From: Diadema antillarum
Lineage: Eukaryota
Assembly: GCF_040938485.1 (NCBI RefSeq)
Contig: NW_027271004.1
Span: 1,054,001-1,118,000, forward strand
Length of the DNA: 64,000 bases
Direction: 5' to 3'
In this document: positions 389 through 20,600 of the stretch, in pieces
Layout: every line of letters begins with the position of its first letter
How positions within the stretch are numbered: position 1 is the stretch's first letter
Notes under the pieces: generated by a model
What the model was told of the DNA's origin: nothing
Database searches by the model: none
What the model saw: the letters and a program-made list of their open reading frames with translations, nothing else
Program-made: the position numbers and the translations under genes

Positions 389-434
<46 letters not shown>
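389..434. repeat. (CA)n microsatellite
   Basis: Perfect CA run; explains the HTHTHT ORF at 259-507. Confidence 0.95.
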
Positions 435-436
<2 letters not shown>

Positions 437-479
437 GTCACATACATACACACATACACGCGTACACGCACAGACTTTT

Positions 480-872
480 TACTGTCCATGAAAATTTACC
501 AACTTAAGGAACGTTATAAAATTACCTAAGTACTGGTAAGAAATAGGCCTACCCAGGCTTAATGTGCAAAATAATGTTGGTAAATTATATTAGGCGAATT
601 TCAACCCAAGTATCAGTTGCCCAACAAAAATTACCCAACACGCAAAGGGAATGCGTCACCTACACAACAGCGGGGCAAAGAGTGCCCAACTCTCCATTAC
701 CAATTCTGTTGGTAAATATTCGCCCAATATTTAAGTAAAAATAATTGCCCATATGTTGGTCTAATCACCTAAAAGCTCAATTGGGCGATAACTGCCCAGA
801 ATGATGATTTTTTTTTCTACCAACCAAGGTATAGCCTACCCAACTAAATTTACCCAATATTTCAAGAGTGTA
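480..872. mobile_element. truncated MITE-like fragment with internal (tt)acccaa/ttggtaaat repeats
   Basis: Repeated CCCAA/TTGGTAAAT sub-motifs ending in TTCAAGAGTG|TA, a typical TA-flanked TIR end. The left TIR was not found. Confidence 0.4.
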
Positions 873-1385
873 CCATTCATGCAGGGACGTGAACTACATG
901 CGTGGCCGCAAGTGTCCGCTTCAGTACATAATGTGTTTATCAATTTTGTGACGCAGAATTTGTCCTTGTTTGATCGAGGTTTGTTGCTCCCCATCATCGG
1001 TGTTTAAATTCAAAGGCAGTTGAGTCTGAAAAGGCACCTCAGCCAAATAAGACCGAAATGGGGGAGGCGGTTATTTTGTCAGTGACGATCGATGCACGAT
1101 TACACAATCGTTATTGTCCAAACGTCTGAATGTACTCATTAAGATGCACATATTATTAGTAGCGGTGGTGAATATTGGATCAAAGATAGACCTCCGTTCA
1201 TAGTCCATGATATGTGTAGAGATTTAGGTCCATGCTCCGACACATATAGAAGAAGAAAGAAGTAGTAAAAGAAAGAAGAAGTGACTAGAAGAAGTGGCAG
1301 TAGTAGTAGCAGCAGTAGGCCCTATTATCATCATTATCATGATTAGGCCTAGCATCATCACCATCATCTATCCTACAGCGTATCC

Positions 1386-1577
1386 GGGCAATAACCCCGA
1401 GAGGGCAATTACCCCCCGGCTAAATACTGGTTAGTGGTAAGCTTAAGAGTAACGATTAGGGTTAGGGTTAGGGTTAGGGTTAGGAGTTTGAGTTAGGGAT
1501 AGGATTAGGTTCAGGATTAGGATTAGGATTAGGGCCAGGGGAAGGGTGCGGGGTAATTGCCCAGGGGGTAATTGCCC
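1386..1577. mobile_element. MITE-like element with internal telomeric (TTAGGG)n repeats
   Basis: Doubled GGGCAAT(A/T)ACCCC at 1386-1398 and 1403-1415 is inverted to doubled GGGGTAATTGCCC at 1550-1562 and 1565-1577. Four perfect TTAGGG at 1456-1479, then variants to ~1534. Confidence 0.75.
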
Positions 1578-2465
1578 TAGACCCCTGGGAATCATTGTGC
1601 AGTATATGCATGTATGATGGGTCATACATGCATATACTGCACAATGATTCCCAGGGAAAGAGTTTGGCCATGGGGTCAAGTGTGAGGTCAAGAGAAAATG
1701 TTCAAATGTCACAATTTCCCCATTTTGAAAATATCTGAAAGTATTGTAATGAAAATGGATGTTACCAGTCAGTGATTACTGAAGTTGTTGCCGATCATCG
1801 GGGTCAATGGCCAAGTGGATGGAAATGCTCAAATTTCCAATAAATTTGCTCATCTATACAAAATCTAGCCATCCATCCAAATTAAACCTAGTTCGCCTTA
1901 GGAAATTAAACATTCAACAAATTTGTGACAAACATTTTCTTAATTACTTATTGTTATTATTTATTTTTTATTATCATCTTTTTTTTTCTCACTGGCAATA
2001 ATACACGTGTATGTTGGTATGCATAATGGGGGAGGCATACCAGTCGCCATGGCAATATTTCTTGTTTTGTTTTTTGTTTTGTTTTGGTTTTTTTTTTTTT
2101 GTCTGTTTGCTTGTTCGTTTCTTTTTTGGTGTTGTTTTGTTTCGTTTCGTTTTGTTTTTGTTTTGTTGTTGTTGTTGTTGATGTTTTTTTTTCGCAAGGA
2201 CACGCCCACATGGCCAAAATTTTCCGCAATAATTACTATGTAACTATAACTGTGCAGCAGGTGTCGGCACGTAGTGAATACACTTGCGGTATCAGACCGG
2301 TGCAGGGTCAGTTCAGTCAATTGGAAGGCTGGTTACGGGTAGGCTGTCATCACACACATCAGTTCTGAGCTGTGCAAAGGCACTGTACCTGGTACTAGGT
2401 ACTACACTTGTAGTACTATACTGTAATATAATTCAAGGCTAGTGGGCCTCTGACTACTGAGTAAG

Positions 2466-4958
2466 ATGGATGACAAACTTGATTTTGAGGATTATTACGA
2501 GGAGAGGTGCGGTTCGCCCAAGGAAGACCGTGGGTATGACGATGAAATCGTTGAGTGGGAGCCGAATATGTTCGAGCCGCTTGACGGAGCATCGGGACAA
2601 TCTGATTTTGAGGATTACAGCAGGTACTCTCGTTACGACGATGGCGATGACGATGACGATGACGATGAAATCGTTGATTGGAAGCCGAATATGTTCGAGC
2701 CGCTTGCAGGAGCACCGGGACCGGTAACGACCACAACCCGTACCGCGCCCCGCGCCGGGGTTGCAGGACCGGGAGAATCTGATTTTGAGGATTACAGCAG
2801 GTACACTCGTTACAAGGACAGAGCACCGGGACCGGGAAAATCTGATTTGGGGGATTACAAGTACACGCATTACAACTACAAGGACAGGTATGGAGACGAT
2901 GATGGAATCGTTGAGTGGGAGCCAAATATGTTCGAACCGCTCTCAGGAGCGCCGGGACCAGGAGTTGCCGCATCAGCTGAAGGCAGGGCCAGAAATAATG
3001 ACCGGTAAGTCACAAGTGGCAGACTTTTATTCAGGTGTGCTAGCTATTAATATCATAGTTTGGTGTATTAAACGGAACTTGCCTGAATGATCCTCATGGA
3101 TCACTAGTTAATGGTAAAAACTGGGCCTTTCTGCCTGAGAGGATAAGAGTTCAACATATTTTATGACTCATTTTACTCTGATTTCATTTGTACCGTTAAA
3201 GGAAAAAAAAAAGGTTGAAATGTTGACATTTGTTACTAAATCATAATGCTAATACAAGGCCTTACTATGAACGTGGCTGATAGTAGTTCAGAGATCTTAG
3301 ATATGACCATAGGCAGTGTTTGTCAAATGTTATTAATTGGATAAGGACAGATAAATGGCATTGTACATATTTTATTCACCAAATCAGATAGGCTGTGTAC
3401 AGGTTTTACATCGATATGACCTCTAGATCTAGAGCCTATAATAAATGTAGCACACAATTTCAACTCAAAACTACACCTGTGGTACTACACCTGTGGTACT
3501 ATACCCCATAGTTTACTTCGGTGCCCCCAGTCCTGAAATAAATATCGATATTGGTTATACATGTACGTGTATTTTGTTATGTCATGCTGCAGGTATTTGT
3601 GCACTGGTGGCTATACACCAATGCCCAGAGTCAAAGAATCCAGCTGGAACTACCGTAAGCCATCGCAGAAATTCATGCCAACAAGGGACGGATATCTGGA
3701 AGAAAAGGGCCGCATCACAGGGCATCCAGGATTTCAGGCAGTGTGTTCGCAGCGATGGGTCAGGGAGACATCCTACAAACAATACTCCTTCACCCAACAG
3801 TACAGGGAGGAAGCTTGGCAACATGCAGCAGAATATGAGTAAGCTACTAGTACATAGATAATTTTCCCTTTGTCATTATAAGGACTGTACATCACATTTT
3901 TTTGTCAAAATTAAAATGTTCCCATTTCAAGAGTATTGCAAGCAAACTCTTGTTCTCTTTGTCTTTGTTTTGGGTAAAGACTAGTGGTAACATTTCCCTA
4001 TCGCCATGGTGGCTACCAACAAGCAATTACACAATGACTCACGGTTCATCTCAGTGCCACTGTATAGATCTGTTCTATGTTGTAAGAGAACCTGGGCCCC
4101 ATTTCATAAAAGATTGAATATGTACATTAGAAAATTGAACATAAAGCTTAAAGGGTGTGTACAGTTCTGGTCGAGGTGTAGATCTAGCTTTTAACATTTT
4201 GCGAGATATTCAGAAACCACTCTATGATATGTCAAAGAGCATGCAGTTCTAAGGGGTATCAAAAGTTTTTCCGATGAAAATCGGTTTTGAAATGGCTGAG
4301 ATATCCAAAAACAAGGTGAAACAAAGAGATCCTAATAAAGTTGGGGCATGTCGCCTTTTATTATTAGCACTTTTTGGGATATCTCAGCCATTTGAAAACC
4401 AATTTTCATCAAATAAACGTTGAATCCTTCTTAAAATTACAAGCTCTTTCATATTTCACAAGAGGCTTTTCATTTTCTCACTTAGGAATGTTCGAAACAT
4501 GAATCCCTACCTCAACCAGTACTGTACAGTCCCTTTAATGTTAAAGTTCATTGTCTGATGCCGACCTGTGTTTGATTTCTCATCTTTTTGTGCAACAAGG
4601 CCCAATTGTGACTAATGTATACCGGTAGTCTGTGCATGCGGGTCATAATTATAATTTTGTTGCTGTGTTACCATGTATGTATTTATATGTACACCCCCCC
4701 ACCCCCCCCCCCCCCCCCCCCCCCCCCCGCCAAAAAACAAAGCAACAACCCAACAATACACATACACACCACACACAAAATGAATATTCATACATGTACA
4801 TGTCTTCAATCTTCTGTCACGTTTACCTTTTTTCCTGCAGAAAATCAAGACACATGACATACGAACAGCGGGCTCGATGGTACTAGGAATACTTTGGTCA
4901 TCACATACGGTTTCCACTTCCGTCATGGGCCGTGAACCTGATCAAAAGTATATTCCAA
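2466..4958 (+). pseudogene. three-exon P2X7 C-terminal ballast/nanor/KolX-like gene with triplicated acidic N-terminal module; probable pseudogene
   Basis: Exons 2466-3004 (CCG|GTAAGT), 3593-3838 (CAG|G ... GA|GTAAGC) and 4841-~4958 (TTTCCTGCAG|A) join in frame through two phase-2 introns. Translation includes LCTGGYTPMPRVKE, ITGHPGFQAVCSQRWV and KSRHMTYEQRARWY*EYFGHHIRFPLPSWAVNLIKSIF, matching recalled ballast-domain motifs. In-frame TAG at 4884-4886; next stop at 5070-5072. Confidence 0.75.
4152..4534. mobile_element. non-autonomous DNA transposon with TTAA TSD (Kolobok-like termini)
   Basis: TTAA at 4148-4151 and 4535-4538. TIR AGGGTGTGTACAGTTCTGGTCGAGGT versus reverse complement AGGGACTGTACAGTACTGGTTGAGGT. 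Internal inverted AATGGCTGAGATATCCAAAA. Confidence 0.85.
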
Positions 4959-7061
4959 TGTGACTTCAGGATTGTTGTCCAAGAGAGATGGAATGGTCAA
5001 ACTTTGATATTGGGGGTTGTTTGTTGTTTTGTTCTTAAAGGGTGGTTGAGGAGCGGTTTGGGCATGATATGACAATTTATCTTGTATGGATTAACTGTCA
5101 TACCACCACTTGTTCGTTTTGGCCAAAATTGCCAATATTACGTCTGTATCGTGCTCGTCTAGTAAAGTTACAGATGTAAAGGATGGGACCGTTTGGGTGT
5201 TTTATGTTTTGCTTGTACTTCTGTTTACAGAGGGAGTCCTCTTTTGTAGATTTATCTAGGTTCAGCATGATTATGCAATTAAATCACCAGTTTGTTTGTT
5301 TTTCTTGTATGGTACATTGTGTTCCAGGAATTTCTAATGTCTGTCACTGTTGCAGGTCATGATACTTTGAGCCAGGTACAAGATACAGTGTAAGTGACTT
5401 ATGTCAGTGTACCTTTTGTTTATTTACTGTTGTTTTAAAAAAAATGCACTCACTTGTTCAACCACATGTAGAAGTACACTTGTACTTTAATATCTCTTTC
5501 TTATTTCCATACTCTTCAATTTCAACACCAGGGATGCATCTTTGCTTTGATTAAAAAAATATATCCAAAAAAAAAAAAAAAATTCACTATCATGGTGGCA
5601 AGGTTTAGTACAGTATGTAAAGTAAATGGAATGGATGTGTATACCAAGGTACCAATACTTGTTTCATGCATTCAAATGTTATAAAATGTCCAATGTATTT
5701 GTCTCTTTGGTCATATGTAGGTTCAGGGCATTTGTACAGTTTAAGACCAAAAGTTTGGGTGTACTATTAATGTGTTCCTACACATACTGGAAATCTGAGA
5801 CTGTTATTACTTGTACAGGATATGTGTTTGCAGTAGTTTGTCTTTACACCGTAGGCATGCTGCTCAGTGATAGTGGTGATGGCTACCTTGCGGGCGGCCA
5901 TTCTTCATCACTGTCATAGTCGGTATTCAAAGATGACAGCCAGTTCCTGCAACATAAGCTATTACAGAAAAAAAAAAGACAATTGTGAAAAATGTATTTC
6001 TCCCTAGAGTGCTTGTGCCTAATTACCAGCATAGGTACAGTATTCATGTTTCAAAGAGTTATCCTCTGCACTTTCACTGATAAGTGTTACTGGTAATACA
6101 TGTAGTACTGTTATGTATACTTGATTGACAAAATGAGAGAACATTCTCTATTCTGGTGCATTTTTTTTTTCTTTTGTCACTTGACAGTCTTTTTCCAAGT
6201 ATCATATGAGTGGATGGCAGATTTAGACACATATGAGAACTGTTTTGACTTGAATTGAGCCAACAATATTTTGGCATGTGTTTTTGTTTGTTTTCTGAAT
6301 AAAATTTGCCAAAAGTTCAAATGAACCCACTGTCATGATTTCACTTAGCTGTGTTTGAGCGTTCAAACGTGAACCACTATCAAACAAAACATATCTGTTT
6401 TAGGAGCTTGTAGTGCTCCTCTGGCGTGGTTACAGCATGGTACACTTTAAGGGAGTGTGCTTGACAGCACCCTTAGTCTTCAAGAGTTATCTCAAGAACA
6501 AGTTTAAGTAATTGAAGACAAAATGAACAAAATAAAACCACCACAAGTCAATCAGACAAGAGCAACAATCAATCGCTCTCCCTGCACTTACTTTTCGCAC
6601 ATCACAGGTCACGTCATTCATTACTCATGTTGCCTTTTTTAACTAATCAATGACAAAATGTTTAAGAAGGCCTTTACATACATGATGCATATTAATTTGC
6701 TACTTATGATCAAACTTTTTCAAAAGTCAACTAGTCTTTGTGCTGATTTAGTCAACCTTGAAGTTGAATTCTTCACTAATGAAAGGTGAAACAGGGAGAA
6801 TAAAGTTGAGGAATTATCAGTAAAATATGACTAAAATGGTAAAATTTTCATTTCTCATTACTCTGAGAAAGTTGCCTGCTTTTGAATCTTATTTGTGACT
6901 TGTAGAATATTCAGGTCCAAGAGCAATCAGACAAATCCATGTATACACACATACTTACACACACACATAATTTGTGCACAGATGTTGGCACTTCAAAAAA
7001 TCAAAGAAAAAAAAAGCATGAAGAAATCTTTTTGTTGCCATTATTAGGCTGACAAGAGTTC

Positions 7062-7067
7062 TTTATT
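7062..7067 (-). promoter_or_regulatory. RPS6 polyadenylation signal AATAAA
   Basis: TTTATT on plus, ~183 nt past the RPS6 stop, followed on minus by a U-rich tract. Confidence 0.7.
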
Positions 7068-7249
7068 TTCCCTGCTTTGTACACTTTCTAGACTTTTGGC
7101 TTTAGACCATAAACTCTACAAAGTAGTTCAGTCAGGATGGCTGCTGCAACGGTGTAGTCGATTTGGTTGAATTGATGGATTGAGGCTGTTGGGTAGTTGT
7201 ATGTGCAGACATTGGTTGTTACATAGATCTGCCGGAAGTGGTGTTGCAT

Positions 7250-14927
<7,678 letters not shown>

Positions 14928-17629: not shown

Positions 17630-20600
17630 ATGTCGTGCGGAGCATCTCTAAAACGTGAAATTAAACTATTAGAGGCAGTGTTCCCCAAAGAAAATGAAAG
17701 GTTTCAACTTTGTACTGCGAACATGGACGAGCTGACGTGCAAGTTTATCGGTTCCAACAACGAAGTCTTCATCATTCATTGTAACTTTACAGTGAGTTAA
17801 ACGTAGTGCTGTGTAGGCTCTTATAGTCTTATTCGTTTGTGTGTGTGAGTGTTCCAGTGACAATGTGGTCTATTGTGCTCATTAGCTTTTGTCTTCTTAG
17901 GAAAAATAAAGGCGATCCATTGTGAACAAAGCCTCCTCCAAGCAAGTAGAGCACATGTTGAAAATCAGGGAGAGTTGCTTGACCAGACCAGTTCCATGCA
18001 AATTGCAAGATACATGCACTGAGAAATCTAGCTAGCCACTTTCTTTCGTTTAGTAAATTTACAATATAACTTTAACCCAGACACTGATCCCACTTCCTAG
18101 TCCCTACTGTACTGCTACAGTGCTATATAGAACTCTACTGTCTACTGACTAATACTGTCCATAACGGAGGGGCCTGAGTGAGCGGGATCTAGCATTAACT
18201 GCTAGACAGGAAAAGTCTTGAAAACATTATAGATAGGCCCTACGCAATGATGATTCATGATTGACTATGGACAAGGTAGAGGCCAGTGATGGATACTGAA
18301 AATTTAGATTTTACCAGGTACAAGTTGCATACTGTCAAGGGATCGCTAGGATGGGTCCCAATGATGGTACACCAAACTCTAACTGCGACCAGCCCGAATG
18401 CGAAGCGTCACTGTGTACAAGGAGCGCCCCGGGCCGGGGTTAACCAAACTCCAATTAAGGTAGAATAGTAGACTGTACTGAACGGAAGGAGAAGAAGAAG
18501 AAGGGCAAAGCTAAATAGACATCAGCTACAAAGAGTAGGCCCCTATTAACAAATGTCAAATGATTAATTTGTTTTACAGCCCAACACCATCCCCTAACTA
18601 GAGTGTAGACCAACCTCGTTGTGGACTGCTCATTGTGGGCATTAAATAAATGGTTTCAGATACAAGATCGTGCCAGGACTGATGGAGATGCTATGTCCTT
18701 CTTTCCATGGACAATCAAAAGCTGAATCCATGACCAACCTCTGTGCTTTATTGTAACTACATGTACAGTCATCAGTAGAACAAGGGTTTAGAACTTTGTT
18801 GTAGAATTTAGAATTGATGAAGTTTGATAAGCCCAGTGTTCATTCTCGACACAGTAGGTCTCCATTGTAAACCCCTTCAAAGAATATTTTTGGAGGATTA
18901 CTGTAAAACGAGAAATGTTCGCATGCATTTTAATTTCGCGAATTTCGCGAGCGCGAAGATTCGCGAAATTAAAATGCACGCGAAAGTTCTTTTCTACACT
19001 ACATTTTGTATATGTATTGAATACCAGGTCCAGTTCGCGAAAATTTCATGCCGCTAAAAATGCCGTCGGCTCCAATTCGCGAAAAAATTCATGCCGCGAA
19101 TATATCATGTTTTACAGTATTCTACCAAGTACCTAATACTTCATGTGTCAAGATGAAACTAAAACTACTTTTTACTGGTTTGGCCCCATGGCATAAGATT
19201 TACTGGTCCATTTCTTTTTTCTTTTTCTTTTTCTTTTTATTGGCCTCGACAATGTTTATTAATATTTTTTTTTCATTTGTTATTATTTTTTTTTTTACCT
19301 GTCATGTTGGAACAGTAAATTTGACAATTCCTGAAAAGTTACTGGCCCAGCAGTGAGAGTTCTAGATCCGGCATATGTACATTTGAACAAAAGTCTGGGC
19401 TGGATGTGTCTATCTACATGTAGATTTAGATCTAAAAACTAGCTGGGAACACTGTTGGCATTTGTTTCAAATATTTTGCACATTGCATGTGGCATTACCT
19501 AGTTATTATACGTGATATCATAATGTTGTGCATCAAACAATACATAATTTGGATGCATGGTAGAAAATCAAGTTGTTATGGGTCCAAGGCAAATTTAATA
19601 AACTCATAGGATGCACTGCATTGGTCTACTCCTGCATCACTGCTTGTGTAAGTGACACCATATCTACCCCATGCATGAGAATTTTTGCTGTTTGTCTTGG
19701 TCGTCAAAAAGGTATTAATATCATACAATGTATCTGCTAAGAGTATCATATGGTATAGACTATTTTATGGTTGTTTTTTGATTTTAAAGAGTCTTAATTT
19801 AAAATGATTTTGGTGAATACAAAATTATTTTTCAGGTGTCAGCCCCTCATCCTATCATGTTGCAAGAATCTTATTCATTGTAACATGTACATTGTATCAT
19901 TTGAAGGCTAGAACGAATAAATACAGTCTTTGTGATTTTTATGTCCTTTTCTGAGAATGTCTTGAATATTTTTTCTGACACAACAATTTCATATCAAGGT
20001 ATGGGCATGAAATTCAGATATAGGTTGCATGCACTAGAATCAGATCATAACTCATGATCTTGAAGGGGTCATATAGTTTTGGTTGAGACCTAAACTTCAG
20101 GTTTCTGTCATTTTTTCAGTGAGATGATAGGTAACCTCCTTTAAGATATGAAAGAGCATGTAATTTCAAGAGGAACTCGGCATTTATTTGATGAAAATCT
20201 GTTTTGAAATGGCTGAGATATCCAAAAAGAGCAATCCTCAAAAAGGTGGACCCACCTTTTATTACGGTTGCTTTGTTTTACTTTGTTTTTGGATGTTTCA
20301 GCCATATCAAAACTGATTTCCATCAAGTAAACTTTGAAGTCCTCTTAGTATGGCATGTTCCATGCTATTTCATAAATGGTTTCTTGGTACGGTATCTCAC
20401 AAAAAGTTAAAAGCCTAATCCTCATCTCCACCATTACTATACCATCCCTTTAAATGTTTATAAATGGATTATTTTTTTATGTGCTATTTAAAGAAATGTG
20501 TAATGAAATCTAAAGAGACATTGATGCCCATCTTTGGTTAGCATGGCATCAACTGTATTATCAAATAGAGCAACACTAAAATAGTGTACATGTGTATAGT

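What the first reader, a model, noticed from the sequence alone, without database searches (positions are those of the whole stretch)
2466..4958. Hidden three-exon gene for a P2X7-ballast/KolX-like domain, with no P2X channel and no transposase nearby
Seen: three ORF fragments the ORF track shows separately splice in frame through two phase-2 GT-AG introns. Established (recalled): CxCGxCxxMP, CITxHPGFxxVC and RYxAYRQFxxW...LPSCxVxxIRxxFP motifs define the Zn/GTP-binding ballast domain of P2X7, which also occurs as stand-alone nanor-like proteins and resembles the KolX accessory protein of Kolobok transposons. Inference: an orphaned or domesticated KolX-like gene, convergent with RPS6.
Basis: partly seen in the sequence, partly recalled or inferred. 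Interest (0 to 1): 0.78.

Follow-up and report, generated by a model that had tools for sequence, protein, structure and literature searches.

The report
Zinc-less, truncated ballast-family gene in Diadema
This sea-urchin locus is a real three-exon relative of the P2X7 "ballast"/KolX protein family, but it has lost six of the seven zinc-binding cysteines and is cut short by a stop codon, so it is a degenerate offshoot rather than a working ballast domain.

Summary
The three pieces do splice in frame through two phase-2 GT-AG introns (2466-3004, 3593-3838, 4841-). RefSeq annotates the same model in Diadema setosum (XP_072166825.1, 276 aa), also convergent with RPS6.

The ORF ends there, and the third quoted motif (LPSW..., 4917-4958) lies after the stop.

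Homology to the ballast family (Pfam P2RX7_C, KolX, nanor-like) holds:
- phmmer hits reach E=1.9e-8, and most of the hits are PF20478 members.
- Intron positions and phases match a Lytechinus family gene.

The locus itself gets no Pfam hit. It keeps 1 of 7 Zn-ligand cysteines, against 27 of 39 other conserved positions. The stop replaces the conserved Trp of RWCW.

The family's N-terminal acidic FEP motif is triplicated in exon 1. Between the two Diadema species the exons carry 3 indels, all in frame, where about 15 are expected at the intron rate. dN/dS (0.51) does not reject neutrality.

There is no transposase, no bracketing TTAA termini and no P2X channel. No RNA data were available.

Verdict: a fixed, single-copy, Diadema-lineage derivative of a known family, either remodelled or slowly dying. 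The scan has noted KolX relics elsewhere in this genome, and exon 1 of this stretch separately.

The parts
2466..3004 (+). Exon 1 (ATG at 2466; 179 codons + 2 nt): acidic, low-complexity N-terminal region with three copies of a DFEDY...IVEWEPNMFEPL module
   Evidence: 92% identical to D. setosum XP_072166825.1; same exon in L001 10001-10536
2481..2582 (+). Module 1 (DFEDY ... EIVEWEPNMFEPL)
   Evidence: internal blastn repeats; FEP at 2571
2604..2705 (+). Module 2 (DFEDYSRY ... poly-D ... EIVDWKPNMFEPL)
   Evidence: FEP at 2694
2781..2942 (+). Module 3 (DFEDYSRY ... GIVEWEPNMFEPL). Its FEP lies 21 residues before the remnant of the first Cys cluster, the place where family members carry PYxFEP.
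   Evidence: FEP at 2931
3005..3592 (+). Intron 1, phase 2, GT-AG. It splits the codon CG|G (Arg) that corresponds to the TG|G (Trp) of WCxCGxC in Lytechinus.
3593..3838 (+). Exon 2: degenerate core of the ballast/ZCD domain (YLCTGGYTPMPRVKESSWN ... RITGHPGFQAVC ... WVRETSY..QQY)
   Evidence: family HMM E=2.6e-12; alignments; no Pfam hit
3839..4840 (+). Intron 2, phase 2, GT-AG, at the same position (E|[RK]) as in Lytechinus and in a D. setosum paralogue
4152..4534 (.). Kolobok/T2-type MITE inside intron 2. TTAA duplications lie at 4148-4151 and 4535-4538, and the ends read AGGGT.../AGGGA.... It is absent from D. setosum and has an enormous word depth in the DNA runs.
   Evidence: signature as given in PMC6004289
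4841..4886 (+). Exon 3 coding part (E)KSRHMTYEQRARWY + TAG stop (4884-4886). The TAG sits where the family has the second Trp of RWCW.
   Evidence: the stop is shared with D. setosum
4887..4961 (+). Post-stop relic, in frame and collinear with the family's last segment (EYFGHHIRFPLPSWAVNLIKSIFQ vs GxLGxxxRVxLPSCAVxxIRxxFP). It is not part of the annotated product.
   Evidence: 10.8 bits alone; the joined score rises from 68.9 to 92.8 bits with X at the stop; second-best piece in the window
7250..7537 (-). Last coding exon of the convergent neighbour RPS6 (eS6 C-terminus)
   Evidence: E=2.3e-16 to eS6 chains; PF01092 on the D. setosum neighbour; collinearity

Best explanation
The locus is a single-copy, immobile descendant of the three-exon stand-alone ballast gene family (Pfam P2RX7_C; KolX of Kol0 Kolobok transposons; nanor-like), fixed in the Diadema lineage. 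Shown: it keeps the family's whole layout. That layout is an acidic N-terminus with an FEP motif, a phase-2 intron just before the first Cys cluster, the HPGF core, a phase-2 intron before the R-x-x-A-Y-R-Q segment, and the LPSC tail. The zinc cluster has been taken apart: Cys became Tyr, Tyr, Trp, Asn, Arg and Trp, and one Cys is kept. A TGG-to-TAG change in the conserved RWCW motif removes the last ~45 residues, which include the third Cys cluster and half of the guanine-nucleotide site. The N-terminal FEP module is triplicated. Inferred: the product cannot work as a canonical Zn/GDP-binding ballast. The 276-codon frame has been kept free of frameshifts between two species, and non-Cys core residues are much better kept than the Cys. 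I therefore think it most likely still makes a protein that acts through its triplicated acidic FEP-type linear motifs and a zinc-free helical remnant, for example as an adaptor or competitor for whatever partner the family's N-terminal motif binds. It does not act through metal or nucleotide binding.
For: Homology: phmmer of the orthologue's residues 130-276 against 1.84 billion proteins gave 24 hits at E<=1e-3. The best clear family hit (a D. setosum paralogue) has E=1.9e-8. Two higher-ranked hits (P0002 from a plant, P0003 from a shrimp; many short stretches) were not examined. 15 of 22 aligned sequences are PF20478. The alignment is collinear from FEP to RW. A local family HMM scores 68.9 bits, or 92.8 with X at the stop. 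Gene structure: intron positions and phases (2, 2) are identical in Lytechinus variegatus LOC121429815. Orthologue: D. setosum XP_072166825.1 has the same exons, the same stop and the same RPS6 neighbour. Constraint: exons have 3 indels (6, 3 and 3 nt) in 831 nt, against 23 in 1202 nt of introns. The Poisson P is 1.8e-4, and all three are in frame with P~0.004. Selective loss: Zn Cys 1 of 7 kept against 27 of 39 other conserved columns, Fisher p=0.010. N-terminal motif: all 17 family members with a long N-terminus have PY.[FY]EP 25-35 residues before CxCxxC. Here EPNMFEP occurs three times, the last one 21 residues before. Exon 1 dN/dS is 0.38. Single copy: contig depth on the exons is like the flanks, unlike the MITE, and there is only one such protein in the database.
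Against: No RNA evidence: the only runs holding the stretch are DNA contigs that cover the introns. Overall dN/dS is 0.51 with 17 non-synonymous and 8 synonymous changes, not different from neutral (p=0.13). In the ballast-like part the counts are 6 and 1, giving dN/dS about 1.6. There is no Pfam hit for the product or its pieces. A nonsense mutation inside a conserved motif is the classic mark of a pseudogene. The indel comparison rests on one species pair, and introns hold more indel-prone simple sequence. The proposed motif-based function is pure inference, and no function is known for the family's FEP motif. Structure prediction was uninformative.
Confidence: 0.5

Rival explanations
1. It is a young unitary pseudogene. 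A fixed copy of a KolX/nanor-like gene lost its function (zinc ligands, then a nonsense mutation) and is decaying. The remaining 276-codon ORF is annotated only because it has not yet been hit by a frameshift.
For: There is an in-frame TAG in the conserved RWCW motif, with a still recognisable relic after it. 6 of 7 Zn ligands are lost. C-terminal dN/dS is about 1.6, and overall N:S is not different from neutral. No Pfam hit. No expression evidence. The locus sits on the longest stem of the family tree, 1.56 changes per column.
Against: Exons have about five times fewer indels than introns and flanks, and all three are in frame. Cys positions are lost far more than other conserved positions (p=0.010), which uniform decay does not predict. 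Losing six separate Cys codons by neutral drift would need a divergence at which a 276-codon ORF should also have picked up stops and frameshifts (inference). The triplicated exon 1 is intact in both species.
Confidence: 0.38
2. It is the accessory (KolX) gene of a still recognisable Kolobok transposon, whose transposase and termini lie nearby or just outside the window.
For: The family is carried by Kol0 Kolobok elements (PMC9587614). Earlier scan notes report such elements in this genome (not checked here). A Kolobok-type MITE sits in intron 2.
Against: No TTAA + AGGRR termini bracket the gene, and no convincing inverted repeats flank it. The convergent neighbour 2.3 kb away is RPS6, not a transposase. 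The 10 kb upstream in D. setosum holds only a LINE with APE and RT domains. The locus is single copy and syntenic in two species.
Confidence: 0.04
3. The full ballast domain is still made, by read-through of the TAG or by a splice form that avoids it, so the post-stop LPSW segment is part of a longer product.
For: The post-stop segment is in frame, collinear and open for 61 codons. It has no indel and is 97% identical between the two species.
Against: 75 nt is too short for its conservation to mean anything (about 1.4 indels expected). Its Zn Cys is also replaced (LPSW), and the window species changed the conserved Pro to Gln. No alternative splice sites that skip the TAG were seen. RefSeq ends the model at the TAG.
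Confidence: 0.05
4. Chance: unrelated ORF fragments that happen to splice in frame and to resemble a few motifs.
For: No Pfam, PDB or Atlas hit for the single pieces.
Against: phmmer E-values go down to 1.9e-8 in a 1.84-billion-protein library. The alignment is collinear over about 110 residues. Intron positions and phases are shared with the family. An orthologue is annotated in another species.
Confidence: 0.01

Closest known systems
Stand-alone ZCD / nanor-like ballast proteins of invertebrates (Rump et al. 2020, PMC7016195; Pfam PF20478 P2RX7_C), e.g. Lytechinus variegatus LOC121429815 (P0027)
   Same: Whole-protein layout: acidic N-terminus with an FEP motif, then the MP..VKES, ITxHPGFxxVC, WVxET..Y..QQY and R.xxY.Q..RW segments. 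Three exons with phase-2 introns at identical positions. No P2X channel part.
   Different: 6 of 7 Zn-ligand Cys are replaced. The product ends at RWY, before the (L/I/V)PSC...IRxxFP cluster. The N-terminal module is triplicated. It falls below Pfam's detection. It is not syntenic with the Lytechinus gene within 10 kb.
KolX accessory protein of Kol0-lineage Kolobok DNA transposons (Kojima & Bao 2022, PMC9587614)
   Same: Same protein family (ballast fold, HPGF-type core as in Kolobok-1_Aqu 2p). The closest hit is a multi-copy D. setosum paralogue.
   Different: No linked transposase, no TTAA/RR termini around the gene, single copy, fixed beside RPS6 in two species. The seven Cys that the paper stresses are mostly gone.
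KolX-like second proteins of some piggyBac families that lack most of the seven Cys (PMC9587614, Data S6)
   Same: Precedent for ballast-family relatives without the zinc cluster.
   Different: Those resemble only the C-terminal part (AY..F...LGK..RV.IP.CA...IRR.WP). That is exactly the part missing from the product here, and this locus keeps the middle HPGF core instead. They are also transposon-borne.
Cytoplasmic ballast of vertebrate P2X7 (rat structure 6U9V, McCarthy et al. 2019, as cited in PMC7016195)
   Same: Distant homology through the family. The R-H pair of the guanine-nucleotide site is kept (SRHMTY).
   Different: No P2X channel. No direct sequence hit to any PDB chain. The zinc cluster is lost. 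The R574/R578/K583 equivalents lie after the stop.

Membership tests
Ballast / ZCD family (Pfam PF20478 P2RX7_C; PANTHER PTHR36981) | Significant sequence similarity to accepted members | tested here: met
   phmmer gave 24 hits at E<=1e-3. The best clear family hit is 1.9e-8. 15 of 22 aligned sequences carry PF20478. The local HMM scores 68.9 bits.
Ballast / ZCD family (Pfam PF20478 P2RX7_C; PANTHER PTHR36981) | Match to the curated Pfam profile above its gathering score | tested here: not met
   No PF20478 hit even at E<=10, for the window's pieces or for the full D. setosum orthologue.
Ballast / ZCD family (Pfam PF20478 P2RX7_C; PANTHER PTHR36981) | Seven or eight Zn-coordinating Cys in three clusters: PxWCxCxxC; CC...CIT; (L/I/V)PSC (PMC7016195) | tested here: not met
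   Cluster 1 reads R-Y-L-C-T-G-G-Y (one Cys kept). Cluster 2 reads S-W-N ... R-I-T. Cluster 3 reads P-S-W and lies after the stop.
Ballast / ZCD family (Pfam PF20478 P2RX7_C; PANTHER PTHR36981) | Guanine-nucleotide site (rat P2X7 R546-H547 and R574/R578/K583; PMC7016195) | tested here: not met
   The R-H pair is kept (SRHMTY). The second half maps to the post-stop segment LPSWAVNLIKSIFQ and is not in the product.
Ballast / ZCD family (Pfam PF20478 P2RX7_C; PANTHER PTHR36981) | Ballast fold | tested here: inconclusive
   AF2 with 29-sequence alignments gave pLDDT 54 for the Diadema protein and 42 for an intact Lytechinus member. The method therefore had no power, and no fold search was run.
Ballast / ZCD family (Pfam PF20478 P2RX7_C; PANTHER PTHR36981) | Sea-urchin family gene structure: three coding exons, two phase-2 introns before the WC|xC cluster and before R-x-x-A-Y-R-Q | tested here: met
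   Window 3004/3593 and 3838/4841. L. variegatus 10323/12254 and 12487/14321, both phase 2. The D. setosum paralogue has the same second junction.
Ballast / ZCD family (Pfam PF20478 P2RX7_C; PANTHER PTHR36981) | Acidic N-terminus with a PYx[FY]EP motif 25-35 residues before the first Cys cluster (my own observation on 17 members from 4 lineages) | tested here: met
   The window has EPNMFEP three times, and the last copy lies 21 residues before the cluster remnant. The match is by motif and position only, not by a statistical score.
KolX gene of an autonomous Kol0 Kolobok transposon | Linked DDD/E (THAP-type) transposase gene in the same element | tested here: not met
   The neighbours are RPS6 (convergent) and, in D. 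setosum, a LINE upstream. No other called gene lies within 10 kb. ORF inspection of the window shows nothing transposase-like near the gene. Short transposase exons could escape this check.
KolX gene of an autonomous Kol0 Kolobok transposon | TTAA target duplication and inverted terminal repeats with RR/AGGRR ends bracketing the gene | tested here: not met
   The only such termini are those of the 383-bp MITE inside intron 2.
KolX gene of an autonomous Kol0 Kolobok transposon | Several copies in the genome | tested here: not met
   Exon depth is like the flanking single-copy DNA. There is one protein of this kind in D. setosum. The position is syntenic in two species.
P2X7 receptor | P2X channel domain (IPR001429) upstream of the ballast in the same gene | tested here: not met
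   The ORF starts at an ATG in exon 1 with the family's stand-alone N-terminus. The RefSeq model is 276 aa with no Pfam domain.

The most novel reading that the evidence does not exclude
A host-retained, zinc-free and truncated KolX derivative whose triplicated acidic FEP motif competes with transposon-borne KolX for its partner. That would make it a domesticated dominant-negative regulator of Kolobok transposition, in a genome where Kolobok-type MITEs have inserted since the split from D. setosum.
Probability: 0.08. Interest if true: 0.6.

Novelty: new variant of a known kind. Interest (0 to 1): 0.3.

Why it matters
The stand-alone ballast/KolX family is widespread in animals, yet no function is known for it or for its conserved N-terminal PYxFEP motif. 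In this locus the zinc cluster and the nucleotide site are gone, but the reading frame, the HPGF core and a triplicated N-terminal motif are kept. If it is expressed, it is a natural separation-of-function variant. It would show which part of these proteins can matter without metal binding, and it gives a concrete bait (the FEP module) for finding the family's partner. If it is only a dying gene, it is one more relic of a very common family, and it shows that RefSeq 'uncharacterized protein' models can be truncated pseudogenes.

Tried and rejected
- Pfam on the separate pieces and on the full orthologue: no hit.
- phmmer of exon 2 against PDB chains at E<=10: nothing.
- ESM Atlas feature search on exon 2: no usable hit.
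- Word-based protein search with the C-terminal region: only the orthologue itself.
- RNA evidence: the one run search returned no RNA holder. The four runs laid were contigs that cover the introns, that is DNA of a close relative whose differences match D. setosum. They say nothing on splicing, and both caps are used.
- AlphaFold2 of the C-terminal part gave pLDDT 54. The control on an intact Lytechinus member with the same alignment gave 42. Folding was therefore uninformative and I ran no fold search.
- Synteny with the Lytechinus family gene: RPS6 is not within 10 kb of it.
- Whether the closest D. setosum paralogue rides a Kolobok element: Pfam on the long ORFs of L003 gave nothing useful. 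Left open.
- Tree of 33 family sequences: the Diadema pair sits on the longest stem with no resolved sister.
- Link to the Cys-poor piggyBac KolX-like proteins: rejected, because they match only the C-terminal segment that is missing here.
- The 7-nt GTACTAG around the stop is far too short to be an intron and would shift the frame.
- I did not hand the 276-aa spliced window protein to the search tools, because it has no reference. The orthologue P0001 and local scripts were used instead.
Full report
**1. What is in the sequence**

The + strand holds an ATG at 2466 and an open frame to 3004, followed by GTAAGT. After ...GCAG the frame resumes at 3593 and runs to 3838, followed by GTAAGC. After ...CTGCAG it resumes at 4841.

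The spliced frame does not run to 4958. It reads ...EKSRHMTYEQRARWY and then meets TAG at 4884-4886.

The quoted consensus motifs are not literally there either. The sequence has YLCTGGYTPMP, RITGHPGFQAVC and RHMTYEQRARW.

**2. An orthologue exists and is annotated**

A word search with exon 1 found one protein, 92% identical over the whole exon. It is XP_072166825.1, 'uncharacterized protein' of Diadema setosum, 276 aa.

Its locus (L001) has the same three exons, the same GT/AG dinucleotides and the same TAG. RPS6 lies convergent downstream.

The window is collinear with that locus from 389 to 11765. The window's 7250-7537 (-) is the eS6 C-terminus. The window therefore comes from a close relative of D. 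setosum. Earlier scan notes also call this genome a sea urchin.

**3. Is it related to the ballast / KolX family?**

Pfam gave nothing for the pieces or for the full orthologue, even at E<=10. Nor did PDB sequences or the ESM Atlas.

Because the family scans and the word search left the protein open, I spent the exhaustive phmmer search on residues 130-276 of the orthologue.
- It returned 24 proteins at E<=0.001 in a library of 1.84 billion.
- Of 22 aligned sequences (20 hits plus the two query rows), 15 carry PF20478 P2RX7_C.
- Named examples are 'P2X purinoceptor 7-like' proteins of Acropora and uncharacterized proteins of Lytechinus, Littorina and Batillaria.
- The best clear family hit (E=1.9e-8) is a multi-copy D. 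setosum paralogue. Two higher-ranked hits, P0002 (a plant protein) and P0003 (a shrimp protein), match in many short stretches and were not examined.

The alignment is collinear over the whole protein.

| Family consensus | Diadema gene |
|---|---|
| PYxFEP | EPNMFEP |
| R..N.WCxCGxCxxMPTVKESVCC | RNNDRYLCTGGYTPMPRVKESSWN |
| CITEHPGFQxVC | RITGHPGFQAVC |
| WVLETAY.QY.QQY | WVRETSYKQYSFTQQY |
| R.xAYRQLxRWCW | RHMTYEQRARWY* |

A local HMM of 35 family members gives 68.9 bits for the C-terminal part. This figure is somewhat circular, since the members were found with this query.

The gene structure gives independent support. In Lytechinus variegatus LOC121429815 the two introns are also phase 2 and sit at exactly the homologous codons, TG|G before CxCGxC and E| before RYRNLAYRQ.

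Homology is established. Chance is excluded.

**4. The part after the stop**

The post-stop translation was not part of any query. It still aligns to the family's last segment (GxLGxxxRVxLPSCAVxxIRxxFP) at 10.8 bits.

Reading through with X at the stop raises the score from 68.9 to 92.8 bits.

Among 2862 six-frame pieces of the window it ranks second, after exon 2.

The TAG stands exactly where the family has the second Trp of RWCW. TGG-to-TAG is a single transition, and the neighbouring Cys-to-Tyr is another. The gene was therefore once full length and was truncated by a nonsense mutation that predates the split of the two Diadema species.

**5. What has been lost**

Rump et al. define the domain by three Cys clusters (PxWCxCxxC; CC...CIT; PSC) that hold two zinc ions, plus a guanine-nucleotide site at R546-H547 and R574/R578/K583 (PMC7016195).
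- Cluster 1 keeps one Cys of three (Y-L-C-T-G-G-Y, anchored on the shared intron).
- Cluster 2 reads W-N ... R.
- Cluster 3 reads PSW and lies behind the stop.
- In total 1 of 7 ligands is kept.
- The R-H pair survives, but the second half of the nucleotide site is behind the stop.

By contrast, 27 of 39 other well-conserved domain columns are kept (Fisher p=0.010). The loss is aimed at the metal ligands and is not uniform decay.

**6. What has been gained**

Exon 1 holds three copies of a module DFEDY...(acidic)...IVEWEPNMFEPL.

All 17 family members in hand that have a long N-terminus carry PY.[FY]EP 25-35 residues before the first Cys cluster, preceded by an acidic run. They come from four lineages: Littorina, Lytechinus, Batillaria and Acropora.

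The third Diadema module lies 21 residues before the cluster remnant. The family's N-terminal motif is thus kept and triplicated. This correspondence rests on motif and position, not on a score.

**7. Is the ORF under selection?**

Between the window and D. setosum:

| Measure | Result |
|---|---|
| Exon identity | 96.4-97.8% |
| Intron identity | 93.7-97.2% |
| Exon indels | 3 in 831 nt (6, 3 and 3 nt) |
| Intron indels | 23 in 1202 nt |
| Exon indels expected at the intron rate | about 15 (Poisson P=1.8e-4) |
| All three exon indels in frame | P~0.004, given that 16% of non-coding indels are multiples of three |
| dN/dS, whole ORF | 0.51 (17 non-synonymous, 8 synonymous; p=0.13 against neutrality) |
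| dN/dS, exon 1 | 0.38 |
| dN/dS, ballast-like part | about 1.6 (6 non-synonymous, 1 synonymous) |

The indel pattern argues for a maintained frame. The substitution pattern cannot tell. One species pair is thin evidence.

**8. Expression**

Expression could not be tested. The single run search found no RNA holder. The runs laid were contigs that span the introns, so they are DNA of a close relative. Their differences (for example E-to-G at 4864 and Q-to-P at 4957) match D. setosum.

They do show that the TAG is kept there and that the exons are single copy. The RefSeq model shows only that an independent gene caller reached the same structure.

**9. Mobile-element context**

- No inverted repeats or TTAA + AGGRR termini bracket the gene.
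- There is no room for a transposase between the stop and RPS6, which lie 2.3 kb apart.
- The 10 kb upstream in D. setosum holds only a tandemly duplicated LINE with APE, RT and zf-RVT domains.
- Inside intron 2 sits a 383-bp MITE (4152-4534) with TTAA duplications and AGGGT/AGGGA ends. That is the Kolobok/T2-MITE signature described in PMC6004289.
- The MITE is absent from D. setosum, where the site reads TCAA. Its words are extremely abundant in the DNA runs, and a diverged copy lies at 20146-20449.
- Kolobok-type elements have therefore moved recently in this lineage, but this gene is not part of one now.

**10. Reading**

Shown: the locus is a fixed, single-copy, long-branch descendant of the three-exon ballast/KolX/nanor-like family, with its zinc cluster dismantled, its C-terminus cut off and its N-terminal motif triplicated.

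Inferred: it cannot be a canonical Zn/GDP ballast.

My best reading (0.5) is that it still encodes a protein acting through the acidic FEP modules and a zinc-free helical remnant. The main rival (0.38) is a young pseudogene whose ORF has simply not broken yet. A live Kolobok element, read-through of the stop, and chance are all unlikely.

**11. Comparison with what is known**

The family, its transposon link (KolX) and its spread through invertebrates are published (PMC7016195, PMC9587614). Cys-poor relatives are known from some piggyBac families, but those match only the C-terminal segment that is missing here.

I found no description of a syntenically fixed, zinc-less, truncated member with a multiplied N-terminal motif. 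It is a new variant of a known kind and of modest interest.

The scan has already noted KolX relics on other pieces of this genome, and exon 1 of this very stretch was noted separately.

**12. Operators' notes**

No N was filled. Read laying was given 4996 letters.

Noticed in passing
window 4148-4538: A 383-bp MITE (4152-4534) sits in intron 2, with TTAA target duplications on both sides and ends AGGGT.../AGGGA.... This is the Kolobok/T2-MITE signature. It is absent at the orthologous D. setosum site, and its words have a depth of about a million in the DNA runs. An internal 87-nt inverted repeat lies at 4225-4311 / 4372-4458.
   Followed up: partly
window 20146-20449: A second, diverged (76%) copy of the same MITE, in the opposite orientation.
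   Followed up: no
L001 1-6200 (D. setosum, 4-8 kb upstream of the orthologue; outside the window): An intact 1258-aa ORF (1875-5651, minus strand) with endonuclease, reverse transcriptase and zf-RVT domains, that is a LINE. It lies in a tandem duplication with a 4143-bp period, whose first 300 nt are 100% identical.
   Followed up: partly
window 4692-4732: A run of about 35 C in intron 2, just upstream of the exon 3 acceptor. Contigs of the relative break there.
   Followed up: no
window 1583-1656: A perfect 35-nt inverted repeat with a 4-nt loop, upstream of the gene. Nature unknown.
   Followed up: no
window 7925-8466: Paired inverted repeats (26 nt at 96% and 24 nt at 100%) about 400-500 nt apart inside the RPS6 gene region. 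Possibly another MITE. The collinearity with D. setosum breaks between 7927 and 8466.
   Followed up: no
L002 10323 (Lytechinus variegatus LOC121429815): The first intron of the intact Lytechinus family gene uses a GC donor (ACTG|GCAAGT) rather than GT.
   Followed up: no
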